Below are positions 131 to 64,000 of a DNA stretch of 64,000 bases, in pieces. Within the stretch, counting starts at the first letter, position 1; every line of letters begins with the position of its first letter. The stretch spans positions 232,631,758 through 232,695,757 of the forward strand of contig NC_052147.1 in assembly GCF_902713615.1 (NCBI RefSeq), written 5' to 3'. The stretch comes from Scyliorhinus canicula. Lineage: Eukaryota. The translations under genes were made by a program, and so were the position numbers. The notes beneath the pieces are model-generated. The model was not told where the DNA came from, made no database searches, and saw only the letters and a program-made list of their open reading frames with translations.

Positions 131-160
131 TGATGAGACCATCAATTCACGTGACACGCA

Positions 161-389
161 GGGCAGCATGGTGGCCTAGTGGTTAGCACAACTGCCTCAC
201 GGCAGTGAGGTCCCAGGTTCGATCCCGGCTCTGGGTCACTGTCCGTGTGGAGTTTGCACGTTCTCCCCGTGTCTGCGTGGGTTTCACCCCCACAACCCAA
301 AAATGTGCAGAGTAGGTGGATTGGCCACGCTAAATTGCCCCTTAATTGGAAAAAATAATTGGCTAATCTAAATTTATTTTAAAAAAAAC
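161..389 (+). mobile_element. tRNA-derived SINE (HE1-like) inserted in the 3' LTR of element A
   Basis: A box TGGCCTAGTGG, B box GGTTCGATCC, A-rich tail, ~15-bp TSD aattcacgtgacacg / aattcatgcgacacg. Confidence 0.9.
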
Positions 390-1001
390 AAATTCATGCG
401 ACACGTGGTTAGAAGCGAACAGTGGTTTTAATCATCTTACAACAGAGCCTGCCTGTAACGAGATGAACTCTAGATGAACTGGCAGGAAGGCTCACAACAG
501 CAACCTTTATACTTCCGGTTAGGGGGAGGAGCCATGGGTGGAGCCATGGGCGGAGCCAAGGGTGGAGACCAGTACAAGCTCCTCATCTCCCCCTATGGGT
601 AGAGCCGCGCAACTACACATGATCTAGTACAAGGTACAGGCTCAACACATGTTGCACAATACAGTGTAGATTATTAGTGTTTATAATTCACCACATTCAC
701 CCCTTGTGAAAAAATCAAGTCCGGCGGGGGTGATGGCTTACAAATTGAGTCTGTCCGGTGGTCGAGTTGTCCGTTGCAATCGGCGGAGCACCGGGGTTGC
801 AGCCTCTTCTGGTGGCTGGACGATCACGGTTGGTTGGGGTACGATGGCGGATTCAGGGGGTGATTCTGTCCGAGCTGGGACGAGTTGGGTGGGGTGTAGT
901 GTGAGGGGTACCTCGGCGGTGGTAGTGGGATTCGATCCTGCCGGCGCTAGGTCCCGGAGGAATACAGAGTCCTGACGGCCGTCAGGGTACTCTATGAAGG
1001 C

Positions 1002-4000
1002 TTATTGGGGGTTTGAGTGTAGTAGAAGCACTTTCTCTACGAGTGGGTCAGTTTTGTGTGCCCTGATGTGCTTCCGGAGGAGTACCGGGCCCGGTGTCTT
1101 CAACCATGCTGGGAGCGAAGCCCCCGTGGTAGTGCCCCTGGAGAAAAAAAAGAGCCGCTCATGAGGGGTCTGGTTGGCAGCGGTCCATAGGAGGGACCTA
1201 ATAGCGTGGAGCGCGTCGGGGAGGACCTCCTGCCAATGGGAAACCGGGAGACTCCTGGACCGGAGGATCAGGAGGACGGCCTTCCAGACCGTCGCATTCT
1301 CCCTCTCCACCTGCCCGTTCCCCCTGGGGTTATAGCTGGTAGCCCTGCTCGAGGCGATGCCCTTGTCGAGCAGGTACTGACGCAGCGCGTCGCTCATAAA
1401 GGACGAACCGCTGTCGCTGTGTACGTAGCTGGGGAAACCAAACAGGGTGAAGATACTATGCAGCACCCTAATGACTGTGTGGGAGGTCATATCGGGGCAC
1501 GGGATAGCAAAAGGGAAGCGGGAGAACTCGTCGATGACATTCAGGAAGTACACATTCCGATTATTCGAGGGAAGTGGCCCTTTGAAATCGATGACGAGGC
1601 GTTCAAAGGGCCGAGAAGCCTTGACCAGGTGGGCCCTGTCTGGTCTATAGAAGTGCGGTTTGCACTCCGCATAGATCGGGCAATCCCTGGTGATGGCTTT
1701 TACCTCCTCAGTGGAGAAAGGTAGATTTCGGGCTTTGACATAGTGGGCGAGCCAGATGACCCCCGGGTGGCAGAGGTCATTGTAGATGGCTTTCAGGCGG
1801 TCGCTCTGCATGCTGGCGCACGTGCTGTGGGACAGGGCATCTGGGGGCTCGTTGAGCTTCCCCGGTCGATACATGATATTGTATTTGTAGGTGGAGAGTT
1901 CGATCCTCCACCTCAGGATTTCCTCATTTTTAATTTTGCCCCTTTGCGAGTTGTCAAACATGAAGGCAACCGATCTTTGGTCGGTGATGAGGGTGAACTT
2001 TCTACCTGTGAGGTAGTGCCTCCAGTGACGTACAGCCTCCACAATGGCTTGTGCTTCCTTTTCGACCAAGGAGTGTCGAAGTTCTGAAGCGGAGAGGGTT
2101 CGGGAGAAAAATGCGACTGGTCTCCCTGCCTGAATCAATGTGGCTGCAAGAGTGACCTCTAGAGGCATCGCTCTCAACCTGAAAAGGGACGGATTCATCC
2201 ATCGCCCGCATGGCGGCCTTGGCGATGTCCTCCTTGATGCAGTTGAAGGCCTGGCGAGCCACAGCCAACAGGGGGAAAAGTGTGGCTTAAATAGTGGGCG
2301 GGCTTTGTCCGCATATTGAGGGACCCACTGGGCATAGTATGAAAAGAATCCCAGGCACCGTTTGAGGGCCCTGGGACAAGAAGGGAGAGGGAGTTCTAAG
2401 AGGGGGCGCATACGGTCCGGGTCGGGGCCCAGGACTCTGTTTTCCACGACATAGCCGAGGATTGCTAGCCTGGTCGTGCAGAAAACGCATTTCTCCACGT
2501 TGTAAATGAGGTTGTGTTTCTGGGCCGTCTGGAGAAATCGATGGAGGTTGGCATCATGGTCCTGCTGGTCATAGCCGCAGATGGTGACGTTATCCAAGTA
2601 CAGAAACGTGGCCCGCAGCCCGTACTGGTCCACCATTCGGTCCATTGCTCGTTGGAACACCGAGACCCCGTTTGTGACGCCAAAGGGAACCCGGAGGAAA
2701 TGGAAGAGGCGGCCATCGGCCTCGAACGCCGTGTAGTGGCAGTCCTCCGGGCGGATTGGGAGCAGGTGGTATGCAGACTTCAGATCCACCGTGGAGAAAA
2801 TACGATACTTGGCTATCTGATTCACCATGTCTTCAATCCTGGGGAGGGGGTACGTGTCGAGGAGCGTAAACCGATTAATGGTCTGACTATAGTCCACGAC
2901 CATGCGGAATTTTTCCCCAGTCTTGACGACCACCACCTGAGCTCTCCAGGGGCTGTTACTGGCATCTGTGATCCCCTCACGTAGGAGCCTCCAGACCTCG
3001 GTTCTGATAAACACCCTGTCCTGCAGGCTGTACCGCCTGCTGCGAGTGGCTATGGGTTTGCAGTCCGGAGTGAGATTGGCAAAGAGTGGAGGGGGGGAGA
3101 TTCGCAGCGTCTCTAGGCTGCAGATGGTGAGTGGGGGTAGGGGTCCGCCGAAGCGGAGGGTGAGACTTTTGACGTTACACTGGAAATCGAGTCCCAGTAA
3201 GAGTGGGGCGCAGAGTTCAGGCAGAACGTATAGTTGAAAATTAGAGTAGCTAGCGCCTTGGATCGTTAGGGTCGCGACGGTGCGCCCATGGAGGTGAACA
3301 GAGTGGGAGCCCGAAGCGAGGGAGATAGTTTGCCGTGCAGGAAAAACAGGGAGCGAACAGCGTCTTACCAGATCTGGGTGTACGAAGCTCTCGGTGCTCC
3401 CAGAGTCGAAGAGGCACGGTGTACTGTACCCGTTGAATTTAACGGTCATCATGGAGTTGTGGAGGTGTTTCGGACGCGACTGGTCCAACGTGACCGCGCT
3501 GAGTTGTGGGTAGTCGGCGGCTCGATCAGCTGAGCTGGAGTGGCCCTGTGATGAATGCCTGCTGAGGTCGCAGTCTTCGATCTGGGTTGCTGAGATTGGA
3601 GAGGATGGAGCCCAAGATGGCCGCCCCCGTGGATCGCACGTGGTGGGCGGCGAAGAAGATGGCGTCCAAGATGGCGGCCCCCATGAGTCGCACGTGGCCG
3701 GCTGCGTGGTGGAGGTTTGCCAAGATGGCGGCCCCCATGGGTCGCACGTGGTGGGTGGCGGCGGAGTCGGAGTACAGGCCGCGGCGTTACGGGGCCTGCG
3801 GGCCTGCAAATTCAGGGAATGGGTGCTCTGAGCTGCGGGAGGGTTAGAGGCTGGGGCTTTCTTCGCCAGACATACTCTGGCATAGAGTCCTTTGCGACCG
3901 CAGCTGCTGCAGGTCGCGTTGCGGGCCGGGCAGTGCTGCCGCAGGTGCTGGGGCTGGCCACAAAAGTGGCAGGCTGGAGTAGCATAGTGGCTGGGTGGCC

Positions 4001-4600
4001 GCGTGGCGCAGGCCTGGGGTAGTCGCTGGTCGGGGGCCCATGACGGGGTCGCGGAGTCCGCAGGGAACGAGGTGAGGCTGCGGAACGAGACCTCCATAGT
4101 AGTGGCGAGTTCTACAGTGTCTTCTAAGTTTTGGGCCCCTTTCTCAAGCAACCGCTGGCGCACGTAATTGGATCTGAGGCCTGCAACAAATACATCGCGG
4201 ACAGCGAGTTCCCTATGTTCTGCAGCATTTACAGCTTGGTAATTACAGTCCTGGGATAAGGTTTTTAAGTCTTTTAGGACTTCTTCTAGCGATTCTGTGG
4301 GGTGAGTAGTGTAGTACAAACGTGGTGCGCATAGACCTCATTGATGGGCCTCACGTACATTATGACGAGTAGGGCCAGGGCCTCTGTATATGAGCCGGTA
4401 CAATTAAGTTGAGTAGATATACGATGGCTCACCCATGCTTGCAGTAGGCTGAGTTTCTGCTCCTCCGTAGTTTCTGTAGTATTTGCTTCAGCTAGGTAGG
4501 CCTTAAAACATCGGAGCCAGTGTGAAAAGATTTCTTTCGCCTCTGCATCCTGTGGGTCGAGTTCCAGTCGATCAGGTTTGAGGGCTGATTCCATGGTCAT
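1002..4600 (-). pseudogene. gag-pol of element A (frameshifts near 4300 and 2150-2290; premature stop at 1002)
   Basis: Gag start MESALKPDRLELDP; tandem Zn knuckles CHFCGQPQHLRQHC and CSSCGRKG; protease LFDSGS; RT YLDNV; RNase H; integrase with D,D35E (IDFKGP, HSDSG, GQVEREN). Confidence 0.92.
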
Positions 4601-4628
4601 TCCTTACTGTTTCTTAAGACGATTAAAT

Positions 4629-4946
4629 TGATGAAACCATCAATTCACGCGACACGTGGTTAGAAGTGAACAGTGGTTTTAATCGTCTTACAACAGAGCC
4701 TGCCTGTAACGAGATGAACTCTAGATGAACTGGCAGGCAGGCTCACAACAGCAACCTTTATACTTCCGGTTAGGGGGAGGAGCCATGGGTGGACCCATGG
4801 GCGGAGCCAAAGATGGAGCCCAGTACAAGCTCCTCATCTCCCCCTATGGGTAGAGCCGCACAACTACACATGACCTAGTACAAGGTACAGGCTCAACACA
4901 TGTTGTACAATACAGTATAGATTATTAGTGTTTATAATTCACCACA
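4629..4946 (-). repeat. 5' LTR of element A
   Basis: Direct repeat of 131-695; minus-strand TATAAA at 4757-4762, Inr-like CAGTT at 4728-4732, ATTAAA at 4678-4683. Confidence 0.95.
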
Positions 4947-4951
4947 AGGAG

Positions 4952-5195
4952 GAATTTCTTCTCTGAGGGTTGTGAGTCTTTGGAATGTCTTGCAACAGAG
5001 ACCTCTGGTCGCAGGATCCTTGTATACGTTTAAGGCTGAGATAGATCGATTCTTGATAAGTGAGGGAATCGAGGGTTACGGGAAAGGGCAGGAATGTGGG
5101 CAAGAGGAATGTCAAATTAGCCATGATCCTATTGAATGGCAGAGAAGGCTGAAGGGCCCAAATGGCCTATTCCTGTTCCCATTTCTTACGGTCAA
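4952..5195 (+). mobile_element. CR1 LINE 3' fragment, right half
   Basis: Continuation of 1-130; FKAEIDRFL coding remnant and CR1-type 3' tail. Confidence 0.85.
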
Positions 5196-5356: not shown

Positions 5357-5601
5357 TGTGGCGCTAACAATTATACTCAAAGTCGAGAGACAAGTACAAT
5401 AGAGGCTTTATTGCTGTGCGATGCTATTCCTCCATCTGCAACTGTAGACTAGGATCTGAGTGACTCACACGCATATTTATACACAAGCTCCCTCTGGGCG
5501 GAGCTAGCTGGCAGGGGCTTACCGAAGGAACCTGTATTACAGGTACAGGCATACATCCCCCTACTGCAAGTGCACATCACTACAGTGATTATATCACCAC
5601 A
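5357..5601 (-). repeat. Solo LTR of element B, flanked on both sides by TSD ACCGT
   Basis: TG..CA, about 96% identical to 10356-10600; ACCGT at 5352-5356 and 5602-5606. Confidence 0.93.
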
Positions 5602-6228
5602 ACCGTTAATGTAGAAAGATGTGCCCGCATTTCACAGAGGGCCAGCTCACACAAATGGACATTAACCCAAAGTAAATTTGGTCCGAACTGTACATTTTAA
5701 AAAGAGTTTTATAGGAAGAAAGGTGGAGAGAAGAAGGGATTTAGTGAAGGAATTCCATAGTGGGAGTTAATCACTGAAGGCAGATCTGAATAGATAGAAA
5801 GTGCACCAAGTGGTGTGAGTCAGAGAGAGGAATGGCAAAGGTTGTGGGGCCCTAGGAGGATAAAGAGATGGGGAGGACTGAGGCTGAAGGAAATTAAACA
5901 CAAGGCCGAGGATTTTAAATTGGAGGCATTGACAATGTTGGGTAATGAGAACAGGAGTGATCAGTGAGCAGAATTTGGTGCAAATAGAATCATAGAATTT
6001 ATAGTGCAGAAGGAGGCCATTCGGCCCCTTGAGTCTGCACTGGCCTTTGGAAAGAGCCCCCCACTTAAACCCACGCCTCCACCCTATCCCTATAACCCAG
6101 TAACCCCACCTAACCTTTTTGGACACTAAGGGCAATTTATCATGCCCAATCCACCTATCCTGCACATCTTTGGGCTGTGATTCTATGAGAACATGGACAG
6201 GGCAACATAAAAACATGGGCAGGATACT
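5357..6228. repeat. Copy 1 of local duplication (LTR + flank + SINE fragment); copy 2 is 10356-11930
   Basis: 5602-5990 vs 10601-10990 differ at about 3 positions; 5992-6228 matches about 11694-11930. Confidence 0.92.
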
Positions 6229-9200
6229 GCAAGTACACATCACTACAGTGGTTATATCACCACATTCACCCCCTGTAAAAAAATGAGTCCGGCGGGGGTG
6301 ACATGTAACTATAATACAAAGGATGATATATTTACAAGAGGGTCCAAACAAAGAAAACCAAGAGTCCATCCGGTTAGCAGGTTACAGGTTGAGCCGAATC
6401 GGCGGTCGGCCGTTCCGCTGTCATTGGCATAGCTGTGGTAGCGACGTCAGCACAGGCGGTGATGGCAACGATGGTGCAGGTGCTGACGGTGTTGGTGCTG
6501 GCTGCTGGCGGGATGACTCCGAGGCGAGCCGAAATCTTCCGTGTCCTCCAGTGTGGGCAGGGGGACGATGGATGGACCTGGTGGGGACGAATAGGGGGAC
6601 GCCGGGGAGAAGGAGGGTGGCGCAGGGGGAAAAAGGGTCGTGGGCATGGGATTGGCACCTGAGGGAGCCAGGTCCCGGAGCGAGACTGTGTCCTGGCGGC
6701 CGTCGGGGAACTCCACGTAGGCATACTGAGGGTTGGCGTGGAGAAGGCGTACTTTGCCCACCAGGGGTTCCGCCTTGTGGTGCCGGACATGCCTACGGAG
6801 AAGGACTGGGCCCGGAGTCGTGAGCCACGTCGGGAGCGATACCCGGGATGTAGACTTCCTAGGGAAGGCAAAAACACATTCATGGGGTGTACTGTTAGTT
6901 GCGATGCACAGTGGCGACCGAATGGAATGGAGCGGGTCAGGGAGGACCTGCTGCCAGCGAGCGGCTGGGAGGTTCCTGGACCGTAGGGCCAGCTGGTCGG
7001 CCCTCCATACCGTCCCGTTCTCCCTCTCTACCTGCCCGTTTCCCTGGGGGTTGTAGCTGGTCGTCCTGCTGGAGGCGATACCCCTGCTAAGCAGGAAATG
7101 ACGCAGCTCATCACTCATGAACGAGGATCCCCTGTCACTGTGGATGTAGTCGGGGAAACCGAACAGGGCGAAAATGGAATCCAGGGCCTTGATGACAGTG
7201 GCAGACGTCATATCCAGGCATGGGATGGCGAAGGGGAACCTAGAAAATTCATCGACCACACTAAGGATGTAGGTGTTGCGGTCGGTGGAGGGGAGGGGCC
7301 CTTTGAAGTCCACGCTGAGGCGTTCAAAGGGGCGGGACGCTTTCACCAGGCGTGCGCGATCTGGCCGGTAGAAGTGCGGCTTGCACTCGGCACAGACCTG
7401 GCAGTCTCTGGTGACTGTCCGTACTTCCTCGACGGAGTAGGGCAGATTGCGGGCTTTGATTAGATGGTACAAGCGAGTGACCCCCGGAAGGCAAAGGCTC
7501 TCGTGCAAGACACGGAGCTGGTTCACTTATGCGCTGGCACATGTACCTCGGGAGAGGGCGTCTGGGGGCTCGTTGAGCTTGCCGGGGCGATACAAGATCT
7601 CGTAGTTGAAGGTGGAGAGCTCGATTCTCCACCGCAAGATTTTGTCATTCTTGATCTTGCCCCGCTGCGTGTTGTTGAACATGAAGGCTACCAACCATTC
7701 GTCAGTGAGGAGAGTGAATCTCCTGCCGGCGAGGTAATGCCTCCAGTGCCGCACTTCTTCAATGATTGCCTGGGCCTCCTTTTCAACAAAAGAATGCCGA
7801 ATTTCAGAGGCGTGGAGGGTGTGTGAAAAGAATGCCACGGGTCTGCCTGCCTGATTCAGCGTGGCGGCAATTGCGACATCTGAAGCGTCGCTCTCTACTT
7901 GGAAAGGCAGAGTCTCGTCTACTGCGTGCATCCCGGCCCTGGCTACATCAGATCGAATGCGGGCGAAGGCCTGTTGTGCCTCGGCCGAGAGGGGAAAATG
8001 TGTGGACTAGATAAGTGGGCGGGCCTTGTCCGCGTATTGTGGGACCCACTGGGCGTAATAAGAGAAAAACCCAAGGCAGCGTTTGAGGACCTTGGGGCAG
8101 TGGGGAATTGGGAGCTCCATGAGGGGGAGCATGCGGTCGGGATCGGGTCCCAGTAGTCCGTTTTGGACTACCTAGCCGAGGATGGCTAAGCGGTCTGTGC
8201 GGAACACGCACTTCTCCTTGTTGTACGTGAGATTAAGGAGAGATGCGGTGTGGAGGAATTTAGAAAGGTTGGCATCATGGTCCTGCTGGTCATGGCCGCA
8301 GATGGTGACATTGTCGAGGTACGGGAAGGTGGCCTGCAGTCCGTACCGGTCAACCATTCGGTCCATTTCTCGTTGAAATACCGAGACTCCATTCGTGACG
8401 CCGAAGGGAACCCTAAGAAATTGGTACAGACGACCGTCTGCCTTGAAGGCAGTGTAGGGACGGTCCGATTTACGGATGGGGAGCTGGTGGTAGGCGGATT
8501 TCAGGTCAATAGTAGAGAAGACCCGGTATTGTTCAATCTGATTGACCATATCAGAAATGCGGGGGAGGGGGTACACGTCGAGCTGCGTGTACCGGTTGAT
8601 GGTCTGGCTGTAGTCCACAACCATCCTGTGCTTCTCCCCGATCTTAACCACTACCACCTGGGCTCTCCAAGGGCTGTTGCTGGCCTCGATAATACCCTCC
8701 CGAAGCAGCCGCTGGACTTCGGACCTGATGAAGGTCTTGTCCTGGGTGCTGTACCGTCTGCTCCTGGTGGCGACGGGCTTGCAGTCTGCGGTCAGATTGG
8801 CAAAGAGTGAGGGAGGCTCGACCTTGAGGGTCGCGAGGCCGCAAACGGTGAGGGGAGGTAGGGGTCCGCCGAATTTGAGAGTGAGGCTCTGGAGATTGCA
8901 CTGGAAATCCAGGCCTAGTAAGAGTGACGCGCAGAGGTTGGGGAGAATGTACAGACGGAAACGGTCGAATTTCACGCCCTGTACAGTAAGTTTAACCAGG
9001 CAGAAACCCTGGATCGGGACAGAGTGGGACCCAGAGGCGAGAGAGATCTGCCGGTTGGCGGGATGGACCGCAAGGGAATAGCGCCTTACTGTGTCAGGGT
9101 GGACGAAGCTCTCGGCGCTCCCGGAGACGATGAGGCATGAGGTCATGTGGCCATTGACCAGCACCGATGTGGAAGAGGTGCCAGGTTGCAAGGACGCGAC

Positions 9201-10600
9201 TGGTCGAGCGTAATGGAGGCGAGTAGCGGGCGATCGGCGGTCGAGTCAGATGATTCCGACGAGGAGCGGCAGCGACCCGTGTCCCGGGGGAGGACAAAAT
9301 GGCGGCGTCTGGAGAACCTGTGGACAAAATGGCGGCACCCATGGAACGCACATGGTGGTGGTGGATGAAGATGGCGACGCCCATGGAGCGCACGTGACGG
9401 GACGGCGAAAGATGGCGGCACCCACTGATCGCACGTGGATTCGGGGGGAGCCGACGTCGGGGCCCATTGAGCGAGCAGTTGAGGCGAGGGGACCAGGGGC
9501 GCAATAGCGGCAACCGTCCGGGACTGACACACCGCTGCAAAGTGGCCTTTCTTGCCACAAGCTTTGCAGGTCGCGGTGCGGGCCGGGCAGCGATGGCGGG
9601 GGTGCTTCTGCTGACCACAGAAGTAACAGTGGGGACCCCCGGGGAGCGCGATGCGGCGAGCAGCGCAAGCGTAGTGCGCGGGGGCCACTGCTGGGGGGCT
9701 GTTTGCGGTTTCCAAGAAGGGTAGGACGGGTGGGCCTGGGTGTCCGTTTGCGGGGTCCACGAGGGGTAGGACGGGTGGGCCGAGTGGCTAGCGGAGTAAG
9801 ATCGCGCACTACGAGAGGCGGCCGTCATGGAAAGCGCCAGAGCCTTTGCGGCCACGAGGTCGAGGGCGGGCACTTCCAGCAGTCCTTGCCGGATGGGGTC
9901 CGATGCAATGCCTGTAACGAAGGTATCGCGCATGAGTAAGTCAGAGTGTTCCGTGGAAGTGAGGGCCCGGCAGTCGCAGTTTCGTACCAGAGGTATAAGG
10001 GCCCTCCAGAAGTCCTCATTTGACTCACCCGGCTGCTGGACGCGAGCAGAGAGTTGATGCCTCGCAAACAGGGTGTTCGTCGACTGTGCATAGTTCTCCT
10101 TGAGCAGTCCCATAGCTGCGGTGTAGTCAGTCACATCTCGAATTAGCGGAAAGACACTGGAGCTAAGTGTGGAGTACAGGAGTTGCTTTTTCTGAGCCTC
10201 CGTCGGGGGAGGGTCCGCTGAAGAGATGTAGGCCTCGAAGACTGCGAGCCAGTGAACAAAGTCTTTTCTGGCATGAGGCGACTGCGGATCCAGCTGCAGA
10301 CGGTCAGGCTTGATTCTGATGTCCATGGTGAACTGAAAATCACACAGCAATAAATTATGGCGCTAACAATTATACTCAAAGACGAGAGACAAGTATAATA
10401 GAGGCTTTATTGCTGTGCAATGCTATTCCTCCATCTGCAACTGTAGACTAGGGTCTGAGTGACTCACACGCATATTTATACACAAGCTCCCTGTGGGCGG
10501 AGCTAGCCGGCAGGGGCTTACCGAAGGAACCTGTATTACAGGTACAGGCATACATCCCCCTACTGCAAGTACACATCACTATAGTGGTTATATCACCACA
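6225..10600 (-). mobile_element. Ty3/Gypsy LTR retrotransposon B (related to A, different LTR); 3' LTR cut to 40 bp
   Basis: 5' LTR 10356-10600 followed by ACCGT; partial 3' LTR 6225-6264; PPT at about 6265-6274; gag-pol in several frames. Confidence 0.94.
6447..10326 (-). pseudogene. gag-pol of element B (multiple frameshifts/stops)
   Basis: MDIRIKPDRLQLDP; Zn knuckles CYFCGQQKHPRHRC and CKACGKKGHFAAVC; RT YLDNV; RNase H SDASD; integrase VDFKGP/HSDRG/GQVEREN. Confidence 0.92.
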
Positions 10601-10993
10601 ACCGTTAATGTAGAAAGATGTGCCCGCATTTCACAGAGGGCCAGCTCACACAAATGGACATTAACCCAAAGTAAATTTGGTCCGAACTGTACATTTTAAA
10701 AAGAGTTTTATAGGAAGAAAGGTGGAGAGAAGAAGGGATTTAGTGAAGGAATTCCATAGTGGGAGTTAATCACTGAAGGCAGATCTCAATAGATAGAAAG
10801 TGCACCAAGTGGTGTGAGTCAGAGAGAGGAATGGCAAAGGTTGTGGGGCCCTAGGAGGATAAAGAGATGGGGAGGACTGAGGCTGAAGGAAATTAAACAC
10901 AAGGCCGAGGATTTTAAATTGGAGGCATTGACAATGTTGGATAATGAGAACAGGAGTGATCAGTGAGAAGAATTTGGTGCAAATAGAATCATA

Positions 10994-11696
10994 TGGCGCG
11001 ATTCTCCGCAAATGCGGAGAGTCGTAAAGGCTGCCGTGAAACTGGCCGTTTCGGCAGCCTCCGCGCCCCTCCCGGGACCCGATTCTCCCCCCCGGTCGGG
11101 GCTAGCAGCGCGGCCCCGTGAAGCACGGCATCGCGGGCTTAGCGACAGTCGCTAAGCCCGCGCGCCAAGCGTCACGGCGGCTGACGCGCACGATGACGTC
11201 AGCCGCGCATGCGCGGGTTGGACGGCTCCAACCCGCGCATGTGCGGATGACGTCATCACGCATATGCGTAAAACCCGCGCATGCCCCTCAGCCGCCCCGC
11301 GGACTGATCCTGCGGGGCGGCGGAGGAACAAAAGGTGCGTGGGTATCGGACCCGCTGTCCGCGATCGGTGCCCACCGATCGCAGGCCCATGCCACCCTTG
11401 GCACGGCCGTGGTGCGGCCGTGCCAATCGGTGCCATGGTTGTCCGGGACGGCACTTTGCGGCCATTTTCACGAACGGTGAGAGCAGGTGTGTTTGCGTTC
11501 GTGAAAACGGCCGTAAAGGCCTGGGAACTCGGCCCATCGGCCAGGGGGGAATTGCTGTTCACCGTAAAAAACGGCGAGCAGCGATCCGTGTCGTGGGGCG
11601 GCCGTGGGGGGGGGGGGGGAGAATAGCGGGAGGTCGGGAAAAATGTCGGGAAGGCCCTCCCGCTATTCTCCGCCCTGTCTTGGGCAGCGGAGAATA
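10994..11696. mobile_element. GC-rich Harbinger-type MITE, present only in duplicate copy 2
   Basis: Ends GGCGCGATTCTCCGC / GCGGAGAAT (right end clipped); absent at the equivalent position (~5993) in copy 1. Confidence 0.75.
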
Positions 11697-11918
11697 GAAT
11701 TTATAGTGCAGAAGGAGGCCATTCTGCCCCTTGATTCTGCACCTACCTTTGGAAAGAGCACCCGACTTAAACCCACGCCTCCACCCTATCCCTATAACCC
11801 AGTAACCCCACCTAACCTTTTTGGACACTAAGGGCAATTTATCATGCCCAATCCACCTATCCTGCACATCTTTGGGCTGTGATTCTATGAGAACATGGAC
11901 AGGGCAACATAAAAACAT

Positions 11919-12526
11919 GGGCAGGATACTCCGTTGCCCGATGGCAAAATCGTGTTCGGTGATCGGGCAGAGAACGGGCTCTGACACCCAAATCGTGGCC
12001 GGCACCAGTTTGACGTCGGTCAGCCATGCTCCATCCCATCCAAAATGGCATAATTGCACTGCTGCCACGGCATTGCCGCGTCATCAGCCGGCACTCCCGC
12101 GATGCTCCAGCCCCGATGGGCTGAGCTCCCAATGGCGCGGGACACGTGTGGTCTCAGTCATGCAGGAACTCCCGTGGTGACTTCGGACTGTGCCCAGCGC
12201 TGCCACACGCGGCCGTGGGGGCTTCTGCGAGGGCTGGGAGAGGCCAGGGGGCAGCTGTGGGGTCACAGATGGTGGGTCCGGTCCATGCACGGCCGACACC
12301 ATGTTGTATGGCGCGACCGCTGCAGGTCGTCTGCCGTGCCCATGGCTTGGGCCCAGCCATTCTAGGGTCGTTTTCGGTGCTTCAGGCTGGTGTTTTACCC
12401 AGCGCCGCTGCTAGCCCCTCACCAGTCCAGAAATCGGTGAGGGTTTCATGTCGATTTTTGGTTGTAAAAGGCCACACATGATCCGCTGGCACTGGCACTT
12501 AGCCGCTGAAATGGAGAATCTAGCCC
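11919..12526. mobile_element. Harbinger-type MITE
   Basis: Imperfect TIRs GGGCAGGATACTCC / GGAGAATCTAGCCC. Confidence 0.65.
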
Positions 12527-63205: not shown

Positions 63206-64000
63206 TAAAAATAGATCTTTTGATGTCAATTATACGTTAAAAAATTCTGTTCTCGGGCAGCACGGTGGCAAACTGGTTAGCACAGCTGCCTCACAGCACT
63301 GAGGTCCCAGGTTCGATCCCGACTCTGGGTCACTGTCCGTGTGGAGTTTGCACAATCTCCCCATATCTGCGTGGGTTTCGCACCCACAACCCAAAAATGT
63401 GCAGAGGAGGTGGATTGGCCACACTAAATTGCCCCTTAATTGGAAAAAATAATTGGGTAATCCAAATTTAGAAAAATAATTCTGTTCTATTTAGCACAAC
63501 TCTTTCTGAGACAAAGAAAATTTAAAAATGATGGCTTAGTATTTTTAAAATAAACCTTCATTAAATACTAGTCAATCACTGATGGCGTGCCACAATGGCT
63601 CCCGGACCAGCCTCCCCGAACAGGCGCCGGAATGTGGCAACTAGGGGCTTTTCACAGTAACTTCATTTGAAGCCTACTTGTGACAATAAGCGATTTTCAT
63701 TTAATTTATTAAGTTAAGACTAAATATAGCTTTAAGGGGTTTGTTTAATAGGATATCATTCGACCAGTACTGTATAAAAAGATGTGGACATATGCATTAT
63801 TTTCCCTTCCCCTCACTCCCCTAACTCAACTTATTTTTTAAATGCAGCTTGGTACAAGGTATTTTCTAGCATATCTCTAGGTTGACTATAACCTGAAACA
63901 TCAAGTTAGCCTTCTGTGGCAGTCTTAGTAATCCAATACTCAGGCCAGGCAGGTTGCATTGCACCTAGGAACTATTGACCAGCTAGTCTTGCCCATTGGC

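What the first reader, a model, noticed from the sequence alone, without database searches (positions are those of the whole stretch)
4615..4690. Element A has no tRNA PBS; its 'PBS' is complementary to its own LTR poly(A)-signal segment (candidate self-priming)
Seen: on the sense (minus) strand the 5' LTR ends ..CATCA and is followed by A-TTTAATCGTCTTA, not TGG. These 13 nt are the exact reverse complement of TAAGACGATTAAA inside the LTR (4678-4690), which ends in the ATTAAA poly(A) signal 49 nt from the LTR end. A further 5 bp (CTGTT/AACAG) can pair beyond an internal loop. The 3' end of the upstream arm would sit 1 nt from U5, the geometry needed to prime minus-strand DNA. Known: S. pombe Tf1 and related Tf1/sushi chromoviruses self-prime using the first ~11 nt of the mRNA. 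Inference: this element shows no chromodomain and has a twin-knuckle Mag-like Gag. Its TATAAA (4757-4762) and Inr (~4731) put the TSS ~40 nt upstream of the pairing arm. The primer would therefore be an internal R-region segment, or the 3' R copy of the RNA, which differs from Tf1.
Basis: partly seen in the sequence, partly recalled or inferred. Interest (0 to 1): 0.88.

Follow-up and report, generated by a model that had tools for sequence, protein, structure and literature searches.

The report
Self-priming Gypsy retrotransposon clade
This shark retrotransposon has no tRNA primer site; the site is complementary to its own repeat at the poly(A) signal, and the same layout in 27 related elements from rays to sea anemones points to a whole animal clade that primes its own reverse transcription.

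Summary
On the minus strand, element A (131-4946, target duplication CTCCT) ends its 5' LTR at 4629. One A follows, then 13 nt (4627-4615) that are the exact reverse complement of 4690-4678, which ends in ATTAAA.

Neighbouring element B has the same geometry with different letters, 16 bp ending in AATAAA. So do all 27 non-redundant relatives I fetched, including an electric ray, a sea anemone and many metagenome contigs. In each, an 11-19 nt arm ends in the poly(A) hexamer. A loop of 21-69 nt follows, then the LTR end CA, usually one A, then the complement. Gag starts 0-30 nt later. No TGG is present and there is no room for a tRNA site.

The best reading is self-primed reverse transcription. 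In the four shark and ray elements, TATA plus an Inr motif place the start site 28-43 nt upstream of the arm. The primer would then be internal to R, unlike Tf1. That point rests on motifs only, because the RNA-seq gave no start site.

The elements have no chromodomain and are no closer to Tf2 than to Drosophila gypsy. The 5-bp extension is at chance level. The "Mag-like" label is untested.

First readers noted the same geometry 22 times elsewhere in this genome; those notes are unchecked. I found no published description.

The parts
131..4946 (-). Element A, a degenerate Ty3/gypsy LTR retrotransposon flanked by the 5-bp target duplication CTCCT (4951-4947 and 130-126)
   Evidence: LTR pair at 96% identity. 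Target duplication and LTR ends. Domain order PR-RT-RH-IN without chromodomain.
4629..4946 (-). 5' LTR of A, 318 nt, TG..CA
4757..4762 (-). TATAAA box, preceded by CCGGAAGT
4727..4733 (-). Inr consensus CCAGTTC. Its A at 4731 lies 31 nt after the first T of the TATA box and is the predicted start of R.
   Evidence: It is the only YYANWYY match between the TATA box and the arm. The same spacing is seen in B and L001.
4678..4690 (-). Upstream arm (candidate self-primer) TAAGACGATTAAA. Its last six bases are the poly(A) signal ATTAAA (4683-4678).
4657..4658 (-). Possible cleavage and poly(A) site (CA, 20-21 nt after the hexamer, followed by a GT-rich stretch). It would mark the R/U5 border.
   Evidence: Weak: 5 oligo-dT reads of one run begin at 4658 (table 6).
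4629..4642 (-). U5-terminal hairpin UGAUG-GUUU-CAUCA, stacked next to the PBS stem in the predicted fold
   Evidence: Seen in A only; conservation not examined.
4628..4628 (-). Single spacer A between the LTR end (CA) and the PBS. It would be the first templated base.
   Evidence: CA+A precedes the PBS in 25 of 27 relatives.
4615..4627 (-). Primer-binding position TTTAATCGTCTTA, exact complement of the arm
4598..4600 (-). gag start codon, 14 nt after the PBS. There is no room for a separate tRNA site.
   Evidence: The N-terminus matches the clade consensus.
427..439 (-). The same arm in the 3' LTR of A, with one CpG-to-TpG change (TAAGATGATTAAA)
151..390 (-). SINE inserted into the U5 part of A's 3' LTR. 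This explains the apparent truncation.
10406..10421 (-). Element B: upstream arm ATTGCACAGCAATAAA ending in AATAAA. The 3' LTR copy at 5422-5407 reads ATCGCAC...
10339..10354 (-). Element B: primer-binding position TTTATTGCTGTGTGAT. It pairs over 16 bp (two G-U, explained by CpG decay). It begins 1 nt after the LTR end at 10356, and gag ATG is at 10326.
10445..10480 (-). Element B: TATAAA (10480-10475) and Inr CTAGTCT (A at 10449, 31 nt downstream)

Best explanation
Elements A and B belong to a widespread animal clade of Ty3/gypsy retrotransposons without a chromodomain. The clade primes minus-strand DNA with its own RNA instead of a tRNA.

Proposed mechanism:
1. An 11-19 nt segment of R, whose 3' end is the last A of the poly(A) hexamer, folds back. 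It pairs with the complementary site that starts one base after the LTR's terminal CA.
2. An endonucleolytic cut right after the hexamer gives the 3'-OH. By analogy with Tf1, the element's RNase H would make this cut.
3. RT then copies the spacer A, U5 and the roughly 20 nt of R downstream of the hexamer. In A this is 49-50 nt.
4. This short strong-stop DNA jumps to the 3' R.

Because the plus strand copies the primer, each cycle would rewrite the PBS as the exact complement of the arm.

In the shark and ray elements the start site lies 28-43 nt upstream, so the primer is internal to R and not the first bases of the mRNA as in Tf1. As a by-product, the 5' copy of the poly(A) signal is locked in a duplex, while the 3' copy, which has no downstream partner, is free.

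Shown: the anatomy, its conservation and the covariation. Inferred: the cut, the priming, the start site and the poly(A) masking.
For: - **Exact complement at the right place.** A has 13 nt and B has 12 exact (16 with G-U). In both, the duplex starts 1 nt after the LTR end and the arm ends in the hexamer about 49 nt from the LTR end.
- **Different letters in A and B inside one genome**.
- **Clade-wide layout.** 27 non-redundant elements all show it, including Narcine bancroftii L001, Actinostola L002 and contigs down to about 43% protein identity. Across about 630 kb of fetched loci plus the A and B regions, every pattern hit lies at an LTR/leader junction. The apparent exceptions turned out to be 9-14 nt versions or truncated contigs.
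- **Covariation.** Positions 7-13 of the stem are paired in 179 of 182 cells with 3-4 pair types per position. Permuted partners give a mean of 106 and a maximum of 131 in 5000 trials. G-U pairs are almost absent, as expected if the PBS is copied from the primer.
- **Constant spacing.** CA+A precedes the site in 25 of 27 elements, and gag ATG follows after 0-30 nt. No other PBS can fit and none starts with TGG.
- **Folding.** The long-range stem is the predicted minimum-energy structure, with z from -3.2 to -5.9 in 6 of the 7 short constructs. The 144-nt L001 construct gave z = -0.4 although the stem is still predicted.
- **Start site.** TATA plus Inr at +31/+32 in A, B and L001, and a 6-of-7 match at +30 in L003, put the arm 28-43 nt inside R.
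- **Target duplications.** 5-bp duplications fix the LTR ends in A, L001 and L004.
Against: - There is no experimental evidence for cleavage or for primed cDNA.
- The start site is motif-based only. Both RNA-seq lay-downs were dominated by multi-copy and read-through signal and showed no 5' end.
- An internal primer would carry a 28-43 nt 5' tail. Plus-strand strong-stop DNA could copy that tail, which would hinder the second jump. Tf1 avoids this by using the very first bases of the mRNA. A second cut or an early RNase H release has to be assumed.
- Invertebrate members have only about 90 nt of LTR upstream of the arm and no consistent TATA box. Their start site could lie at the arm.
- The poly(A) site rests on 5 reads.
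Confidence: 0.6

Rival explanations
1. This is ordinary Tf1-type self-priming. [quoted passage not shown] The TATA and Inr motifs further upstream are not the working promoter.
For: It removes the 5'-tail problem in plus-strand transfer. The stems have sharp 5' ends of variable length (11-19 nt), with no conserved pairing beyond them. Invertebrate LTRs are short, with about 90 nt upstream of the arm and no fixed TATA box, and in L037 a TATA-like box sits about 30 nt before the arm. In Tf1, Tf2 and Tj1 the self-primer is at the mRNA 5' end (PMC4600332, PMC10085805).
Against: In A, B and L001, TATA(A/T)A or TTAAAG lies 59-72 nt before the arm, with a full Inr consensus exactly 31-32 nt downstream of it (L003: 73 nt, 6-of-7 match at +30). 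In A and L001 that Inr is the only full match in the interval. There is no Inr-like motif at the arm starts.
Confidence: 0.25
2. The duplex is only a regulatory or structural hairpin, and minus-strand synthesis is primed some other way. Possible roles are masking the 5' poly(A) signal, packaging, dimerisation or translation control.
For: The arm always contains the poly(A) hexamer, and only the 5' copy has a partner. This is what a 5'-specific poly(A) block would need. Own knowledge: HIV-1 masks its R poly(A) signal in a hairpin.
Against: A mere mask would not have to begin exactly one base after the LTR's CA in 25 of 27 elements. No alternative PBS exists in leaders of 0-30 nt. Near-perfect Watson-Crick pairing with almost no G-U fits copying from a primer better than selection on a helix.
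Confidence: 0.1
3. A host tRNA, tRNA half or tRNA fragment binds this site.
For: tRNA halves and internal tRNA fragments prime some copia-type elements (PMC6317226). Only the three tRNA-like sequences in the window could be compared.
Against: The sites begin TTTAWT, not TGG. Their variable parts differ between A and B in the same genome and among all 27 elements, and each matches its own LTR. The window's tRNA-like sequences share at most 6 nt.
Confidence: 0.02

Closest known systems
Tf1, Tf2 (S. pombe) and Tj1 (S. japonicus): the Tf1/sushi group of chromoviruses
   Same: No tRNA PBS. The site directly after the 5' LTR is complementary to a segment of the element's own LTR-derived RNA. In Tf1 the RNase H of RT cuts the RNA duplex to make the primer (PMC4600332, PMC5341516, PMC10085805).
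   Different: [quoted passage not shown] Here the arm is predicted to lie 28-43 nt inside R and always ends in the poly(A) hexamer. The fold is one long stem with local hairpins. No chromodomain is present, and RT-RH identity to Tf2 (29%) is no higher than to Drosophila gypsy, 297 or 17.6 (31-33%).
Predicted self-priming in the plant Tcn1 (gypsy) and TAR (copia) lineages
   Same: They meet the same operational criterion: at least 10 nt starting 0-5 nt after the 5' LTR are complementary to the 5' LTR (PMC6317226). They also show that self-priming occurs in separate lineages.
   Different: They have other hosts and belong to other clades. No link to the poly(A) signal is reported in the passages I read.
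Mag-lineage elements, including Steamer of bivalves
   Same: Compact metazoan gypsy elements with short LTRs. Some have a single gag-pol ORF and two zinc knuckles, and none has a chromodomain.
   Different: Published members carry tRNA-Ser, tRNA-Leu or tRNA-Arg sites (PMC3286476), and Steamer has TGGTGTCAGAAG for tRNA-Leu (PMC8905726). The Steamer-like element MchSLE1 is described with a YxDD box (PMC11046912). This clade has a self-complementary site and mostly Y-x-D-N.
HIV-1 poly(A) hairpin in R (own knowledge, not tested here)
   Same: A poly(A) hexamer that lies in R, and so is present at both RNA ends, is sequestered in a helix.
   Different: In HIV the hairpin is local and forms at both ends. 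Here the partner strand is the PBS, which exists only at the 5' end.

Membership tests
Ty3/gypsy (Metaviridae) LTR retrotransposons | pol domain order PR-RT-RNase H-IN | tested here: met
   Pfam hits in that order on the 1105-aa ORF.
Ty3/gypsy (Metaviridae) LTR retrotransposons | LTRs with TG..CA ends and a short target duplication | tested here: met
   TGTGG..CATCA with the 5-bp CTCCT duplication. L001 has ATCTC and L004 has CGTTT.
Self-priming LTR retrotransposons (functional class) | No tRNA-type PBS (TGG 0-5 nt after the 5' LTR) | tested here: met
   A has CA-A-TTTAAT and B has TA-A-TTTATT. All 27 relatives begin TTTAWT-like.
Self-priming LTR retrotransposons (functional class) | At least 10 nt starting 0-5 nt after the 5' LTR are complementary to the 5' LTR (criterion of PMC6317226) | tested here: met
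   13 nt in A, 12 exact or 16 with G-U in B, and 11-19 nt in the relatives.
Self-priming LTR retrotransposons (functional class) | RNA is cut to give the primer, and cDNA is joined to the element's own RNA | not testable with these tools
   Needs biochemistry or cDNA-end sequencing.
Tf1/sushi group | Chromodomain at the integrase C-terminus | tested here: not met
   No Chromo hit in A. None of the 120 homologues lists PF00385.
Tf1/sushi group | [quoted passage not shown] | tested here: inconclusive
   TATA plus Inr predict a start 28-43 nt upstream of the arm. No 5'-end data were obtained.
Tf1/sushi group | Three-duplex "pretzel" structure around the primer/PBS duplex (PMC10085805) | tested here: not met
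   The folds show one long-range stem plus local hairpins. Flanking helices are at chance level.
Tf1/sushi group | Phylogenetic placement with Tf1 and sushi | tested here: inconclusive
   Only structure-based identities are available: Tf2 29%, Ty3 29-30%, gypsy, 412, 297 and 17.6 30-33%. No tree with reference sequences could be built.
Mag clade | Gag with two CCHC knuckles | tested here: met
   CHFCGQPQHLRQHC (3971-3930) and CSSCGRKGLYARVC (3911-3870).
Mag clade | Groups with Mag, SURL or Jule in an RT/RH/IN tree | not tested
Mag clade | tRNA-Ser or tRNA-Leu PBS, as reported for Mag-lineage elements | tested here: not met
   The site is self-complementary, against PMC3286476 and PMC8905726.

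The most novel reading that the evidence does not exclude
An animal-wide gypsy clade, from cnidarians to sharks, makes its reverse-transcription primer by cutting its own RNA inside R, exactly at the 3' edge of the poly(A) hexamer. One short helix would then serve three roles: primer, primer-binding site, and a mask of the poly(A) signal specific to the 5' copy. This would be a second, independently evolved form of self-priming. It needs a solution to the primer's 5' tail that Tf1 does not need. It occurs in a clade whose RT mostly carries Y-x-D-N instead of YxDD.
Probability: 0.5. Interest if true: 0.78.

Novelty: new variant of a known kind. Interest (0 to 1): 0.66.

Why it matters
In the papers I could read, self-priming is described for Tf1/sushi chromoviruses, with predictions for two plant lineages. 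Here it appears as the rule in a large, old clade of animal elements without a chromodomain, and in a different layout.

- **Mechanism.** It raises a concrete question: how does an internal R primer that overlaps the poly(A) signal work? That question can be tested with a mini-RNA of about 150 nt.
- **Host defence.** Such elements offer no tRNA-complementary site, so they would not be targets of the 3'-tRNA-fragment silencing that acts on tRNA primer sites (reviewed in PMC7472051). This is an inference.
- **Annotation.** LTR annotation pipelines that look for tRNA sites will report these abundant elements as lacking a PBS.
- **Sequence evolution.** Copying the PBS from the arm at each cycle would explain the perfect covariation without compensatory mutation. 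That makes arm and site mismatches a possible marker of dead copies.

Tried and rejected
- **RNA-seq for the start site and poly(A) site.** I laid four runs on 4450-5000 and four runs on 10290-10560. Reads come from many diverged copies and from read-through, on both strands. No 5' pile-up appeared. The only signal was 5 reads beginning at 4658. I do not treat the depth steps as start sites.
- **Poly(A)-tailed contigs** among the 84 loci fetched at that point: none.
- **Extension of the stem.** CTGTT/AACAG in A, and similar helices elsewhere, are no better than permuted controls. Rejected as a feature.
- **tRNA match.** The three tRNA-like sequences in the window share at most 6 nt with the site. 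The full host tRNA set was not available.
- **Rfam.** No family matches 4550-4960.
- **An invalid control.** Scanning the opposite strand is meaningless for inverted repeats. I replaced it with shuffles.
- **Uninformative loci.** The Trichuris suis and psyllid loci (L085, L086) are chimeric or truncated copies and show no site. DNA for Hypanus and one ENA contig could not be fetched.
- **Classification.** The structure search against Swiss-Prot gave roughly equal identities to all gypsy references. It places the clade outside Tf1/sushi only weakly.
- **Literature.** Lin and Levin 1997, Levin 1995, Lin and Levin 1998, Atwood-Moore 2006, the Jule paper and Tubio 2005 are not held. An older description of this geometry therefore cannot be excluded. 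Searches combining self-priming with Mag, SURL, Jule or poly(A) signal found none.
- **Priming by the 3' R copy.** Considered and rejected. It would leave cDNA joined to the whole genome RNA, and nothing supports it.

Full report
**Observation.** Element A reads on the minus strand. Its 5' LTR ends ..TTTCATCA at 4629. One A follows at 4628, then TTTAATCGTCTTA at 4627-4615. This is the exact reverse complement of TAAGACGATTAAA at 4690-4678, whose last six bases are ATTAAA. The gag ATG is at 4600, only 14 nt further on.

The LTR end needed checking, because the 3' LTR seemed to stop 13 nt early. A tRNA-derived SINE sits in it, at about 151-390. The LTR resumes at 150-131 with ..GATGGTCTCATCA and is followed by CTCCT, the same 5 bp that precede the 5' LTR at 4951-4947.

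The match is far beyond chance:
- Only 2 of 20,000 shuffles of the post-LTR bases reach 13 nt.
- An 18-mer search finds only the site and its partner, against 0.06 expected.
- A pattern scan of the 64-kb window finds A, B and one A-rich hit, against 0.25 per shuffled window.

**What the element is.** The 1105-aa ORF at 4319-1002 has PR, RT, RNase H and integrase in gypsy order and no chromodomain. Two CCHC knuckles lie upstream. The gag N-terminus (4600-4286) is cut off from the long ORF by a frame change. The LTRs are 96% alike, so this is an old, dead copy.

**A second element gives covariation.** Element B lies next door on the same strand. Its LTR ends are at 10356 and 5357, and its interior is 67-77% identical to A. 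It shows the same layout with other letters:
- the LTR end ..GCGCCA(T/C)A;
- one A;
- TTTATTGCTGTGTGAT at 10354-10339;
- the partner ATTGCACAGCAATAAA at 10421-10406, ending in AATAAA.

The pairing is 12 bp exact and 16 bp with two G-U pairs. The 3' LTR copy reads ATCGCAC.., so both wobbles look like CpG decay of a once perfect 16-bp match. The distance from arm to LTR end is 49-50 nt in both elements.

**The layout is a property of a whole clade.** Protein searches found relatives in other cartilaginous fishes: Scyliorhinus canicula at 74%, then Hypanus, Narcine and Mobula. At about 56% identity they found a sea anemone (Actinostola) and many unnamed assemblies. None of the 120 listed has a chromodomain. 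I fetched DNA for some of these and 80 further loci from metagenome contigs.

Twenty-seven non-redundant elements have enough upstream sequence, counting A and B. In every one of them:
- an arm of 11-19 nt ends in AATAAA, ATTAAA or a near variant;
- a loop of 21-69 nt follows (median 47);
- the LTR ends in CA, followed by one A in 25 of 27;
- the exact complement of the arm follows;
- the gag ATG comes 0-30 nt later.

Examples are the ray Narcine bancroftii (15 nt, target duplication ATCTC), Actinostola (13 nt) and contig L004 (15 nt, target duplication CGTTT). The loci that first seemed to lack the layout carry 9-14 nt versions with one mismatch or indel, or are truncated. Across about 630 kb of fetched loci plus the A and B regions, every pattern hit sits at an LTR/leader junction.

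Stem positions 1-6 are the fixed complement of the hexamer. Positions 7-13 carry 3-4 different pair types each and are paired in 179 of 182 cells. Partners permuted among elements give a mean of 106 and at most 131 in 5000 trials. G-U pairs are almost absent. The long-range stem is the predicted minimum-energy fold, with z from -3.2 to -5.9 in six of seven short constructs. The 144-nt L001 construct gave z = -0.4 although the stem is still predicted. In many invertebrate members a small RCCU..AGGY hairpin stacks directly on the arm's 3' end.

**What it is not.**
- It is not a tRNA site. All sites start TTTAWT, not TGG. Their variable parts differ even between A and B in one genome, and each follows its own LTR. 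The window's three tRNA-like sequences share at most 6 nt.
- No Rfam family matches.
Flanking helices are no better than permuted controls.

**Start site and poly(A) site.** In A, TATAAA (4762-4757) is followed 31 nt later by the A of CCAGTTC. That is the only full YYANWYY match between the TATA box and the arm. B has TATAAA with CTAGTCT at +31 (and a second match at +24). The ray element has TTAAAG with an Inr at +32. L003 has a 6-of-7 match at +30. This predicts R starting at 4731 in A and 10449 in B, which puts the arm 28-43 nt inside R.

The invertebrate LTRs are shorter, with about 90 nt upstream of the arm, and have no fixed TATA box. Their start site is open.

RNA-seq did not settle the matter. 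Reads come from many diverged copies and from read-through, on both strands. The one hint is that 5 oligo-dT reads begin at 4658. That is a CA 20-21 nt after the hexamer, followed by a GT-rich stretch, which is a textbook poly(A) site. If it is right, R is 4731-4657 and U5 is 4656-4629.

**Most likely mechanism.**
1. The arm folds back on the site.
2. A cut after the hexamer gives a 3'-OH paired one base from U5.
3. RT copies the spacer A, U5 and the short rest of R, about 50 nt in A.
4. The product jumps to the 3' R.

Later the plus strand copies the primer, so the PBS is rewritten as the complement of the arm at each cycle. This would explain the near-perfect Watson-Crick covariation, and the independent CpG decay of arm and site in dead copies. 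The constant one-base spacing from the LTR's CA, and the lack of room for any other site, argue that this is the primer site and not only a regulatory hairpin.

Masking of the 5' poly(A) signal is a plausible second role, because only the 5' copy has a partner. That role is an inference.

The weak point is the primer's 5' tail. If the plus strand copied the tail, it would hinder the second jump. A second cut, or RNase H release after about 13-18 copied bases, must be assumed. Alternatively the start site is at the arm after all, which is the Tf1-type rival.

[quoted passage not shown] It pairs with the site after the LTR inside a three-duplex "pretzel", and the elements are chromoviruses (PMC4600332, PMC5341516, PMC10085805). 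Self-priming is also predicted for the plant Tcn1 and TAR lineages (PMC6317226).

This clade meets the operational criterion for self-priming but fails the Tf1/sushi membership tests:
- It has no chromodomain.
- It forms no pretzel.
- Its RT-RH identity to Tf2 is 29%, against 30-33% to Drosophila gypsy, 412, 297 and 17.6.

Published Mag-lineage elements and Steamer use tRNA-Ser or tRNA-Leu sites (PMC3286476, PMC8905726). "Mag-like" therefore remains an untested label.

**Novelty.** Searches of the held library found no paper that links self-priming with Mag, SURL, Jule or the poly(A) signal. Several older key papers are not held, so an earlier description cannot be excluded. First readers of this scan noted the same geometry 22 times elsewhere in this genome, all unchecked. 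I rate it a new variant of a known kind.

**Side observation.** RT motif C in this clade is mostly Y-x-D-N: 94 of 120 homologues, including A at 2600-2589 and B near 8321. No paper with YLDN and reverse transcriptase is in the library.

Noticed in passing
window 2589-2600 (A), about 8321 (B); proteins P0001-P0120: RT motif C reads Y-L-D-N (FLYLDNVTICG) instead of YxDD. 94 of 120 homologues have YxDN and 23 have YxDD. No paper with YLDN and reverse transcriptase is in the library. An Asn in place of the second catalytic Asp in an evidently successful RT clade deserves a look.
   Followed up: partly
window 151-390; also 63255-63470: A tRNA-derived SINE is inserted in the U5 part of A's 3' LTR, with a target duplication of about 14 bp (..GTGTC(G/A)C(A/G)TGAATT). 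A 92% copy lies at the far end of the window.
   Followed up: partly
window 5357-11930: B shares its 5' LTR with a partial upstream element: 5992-6228 repeats at 11694-11930, and the sequence above 10654 repeats that above 5655. This is a tandem element-LTR-element-LTR array. B also has about 1 kb between integrase and the 3' LTR, with a 200-aa ORF (5767-6369) that has no Pfam hit.
   Followed up: partly
window 427-439 vs 4678-4690; 5407-5422 vs 10406-10421; 10339-10354: The few mismatches between arms and sites are CpG-to-TpG changes, so they are decay after insertion. A's 3' LTR arm has TAAGATG. B's 5' arm has ATTG against ATCG in the 3' copy. B's site TGTGTGAT probably derives from TGTGCGAT.
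   Followed up: yes
window 4734-4742 and 4698-4706: A perfect 9-bp GC-rich inverted repeat, GCCTGCCTG and CAGGCAGGC, straddles the predicted start site at 4731. It could form only in RNA read through from U3, that is at the 3' end. Its function is unknown.
   Followed up: no
L004:2939-2960, L012:5948-5960, L063:5940-5952 and others: In many invertebrate members a small hairpin RCCU-loop-AGGY begins at the base right after the arm and stacks on the long stem. RCC follows the hexamer in nearly all 27 elements. It may mark the cut site.
   Followed up: partly
L002, L004, L048, 12-30 nt upstream of the arm: The shared motif GCCGCCATGTTTTG resembles a YY1-type initiator (own knowledge). If it is one, the start site in these elements also lies upstream of the arm.
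   Followed up: no
window 4594-4630 and 10331-10360 (loose ends of reads): RNA contigs and reads of the same species show further subfamilies whose post-LTR sites differ again: CA-A-TTTAATCGGCTACGA..TTTAATCAGCTACGA and CA-A-TTTATTCCTGTACGA. Their LTR arms were not seen.
   Followed up: no
L001:4842-5381: The Narcine bancroftii element has about nine tandem 45-nt repeats inside gag.
   Followed up: no
window 4763-4770: The ETS-like motif CCGGAAGT lies directly upstream of A's TATA box.
   Followed up: no
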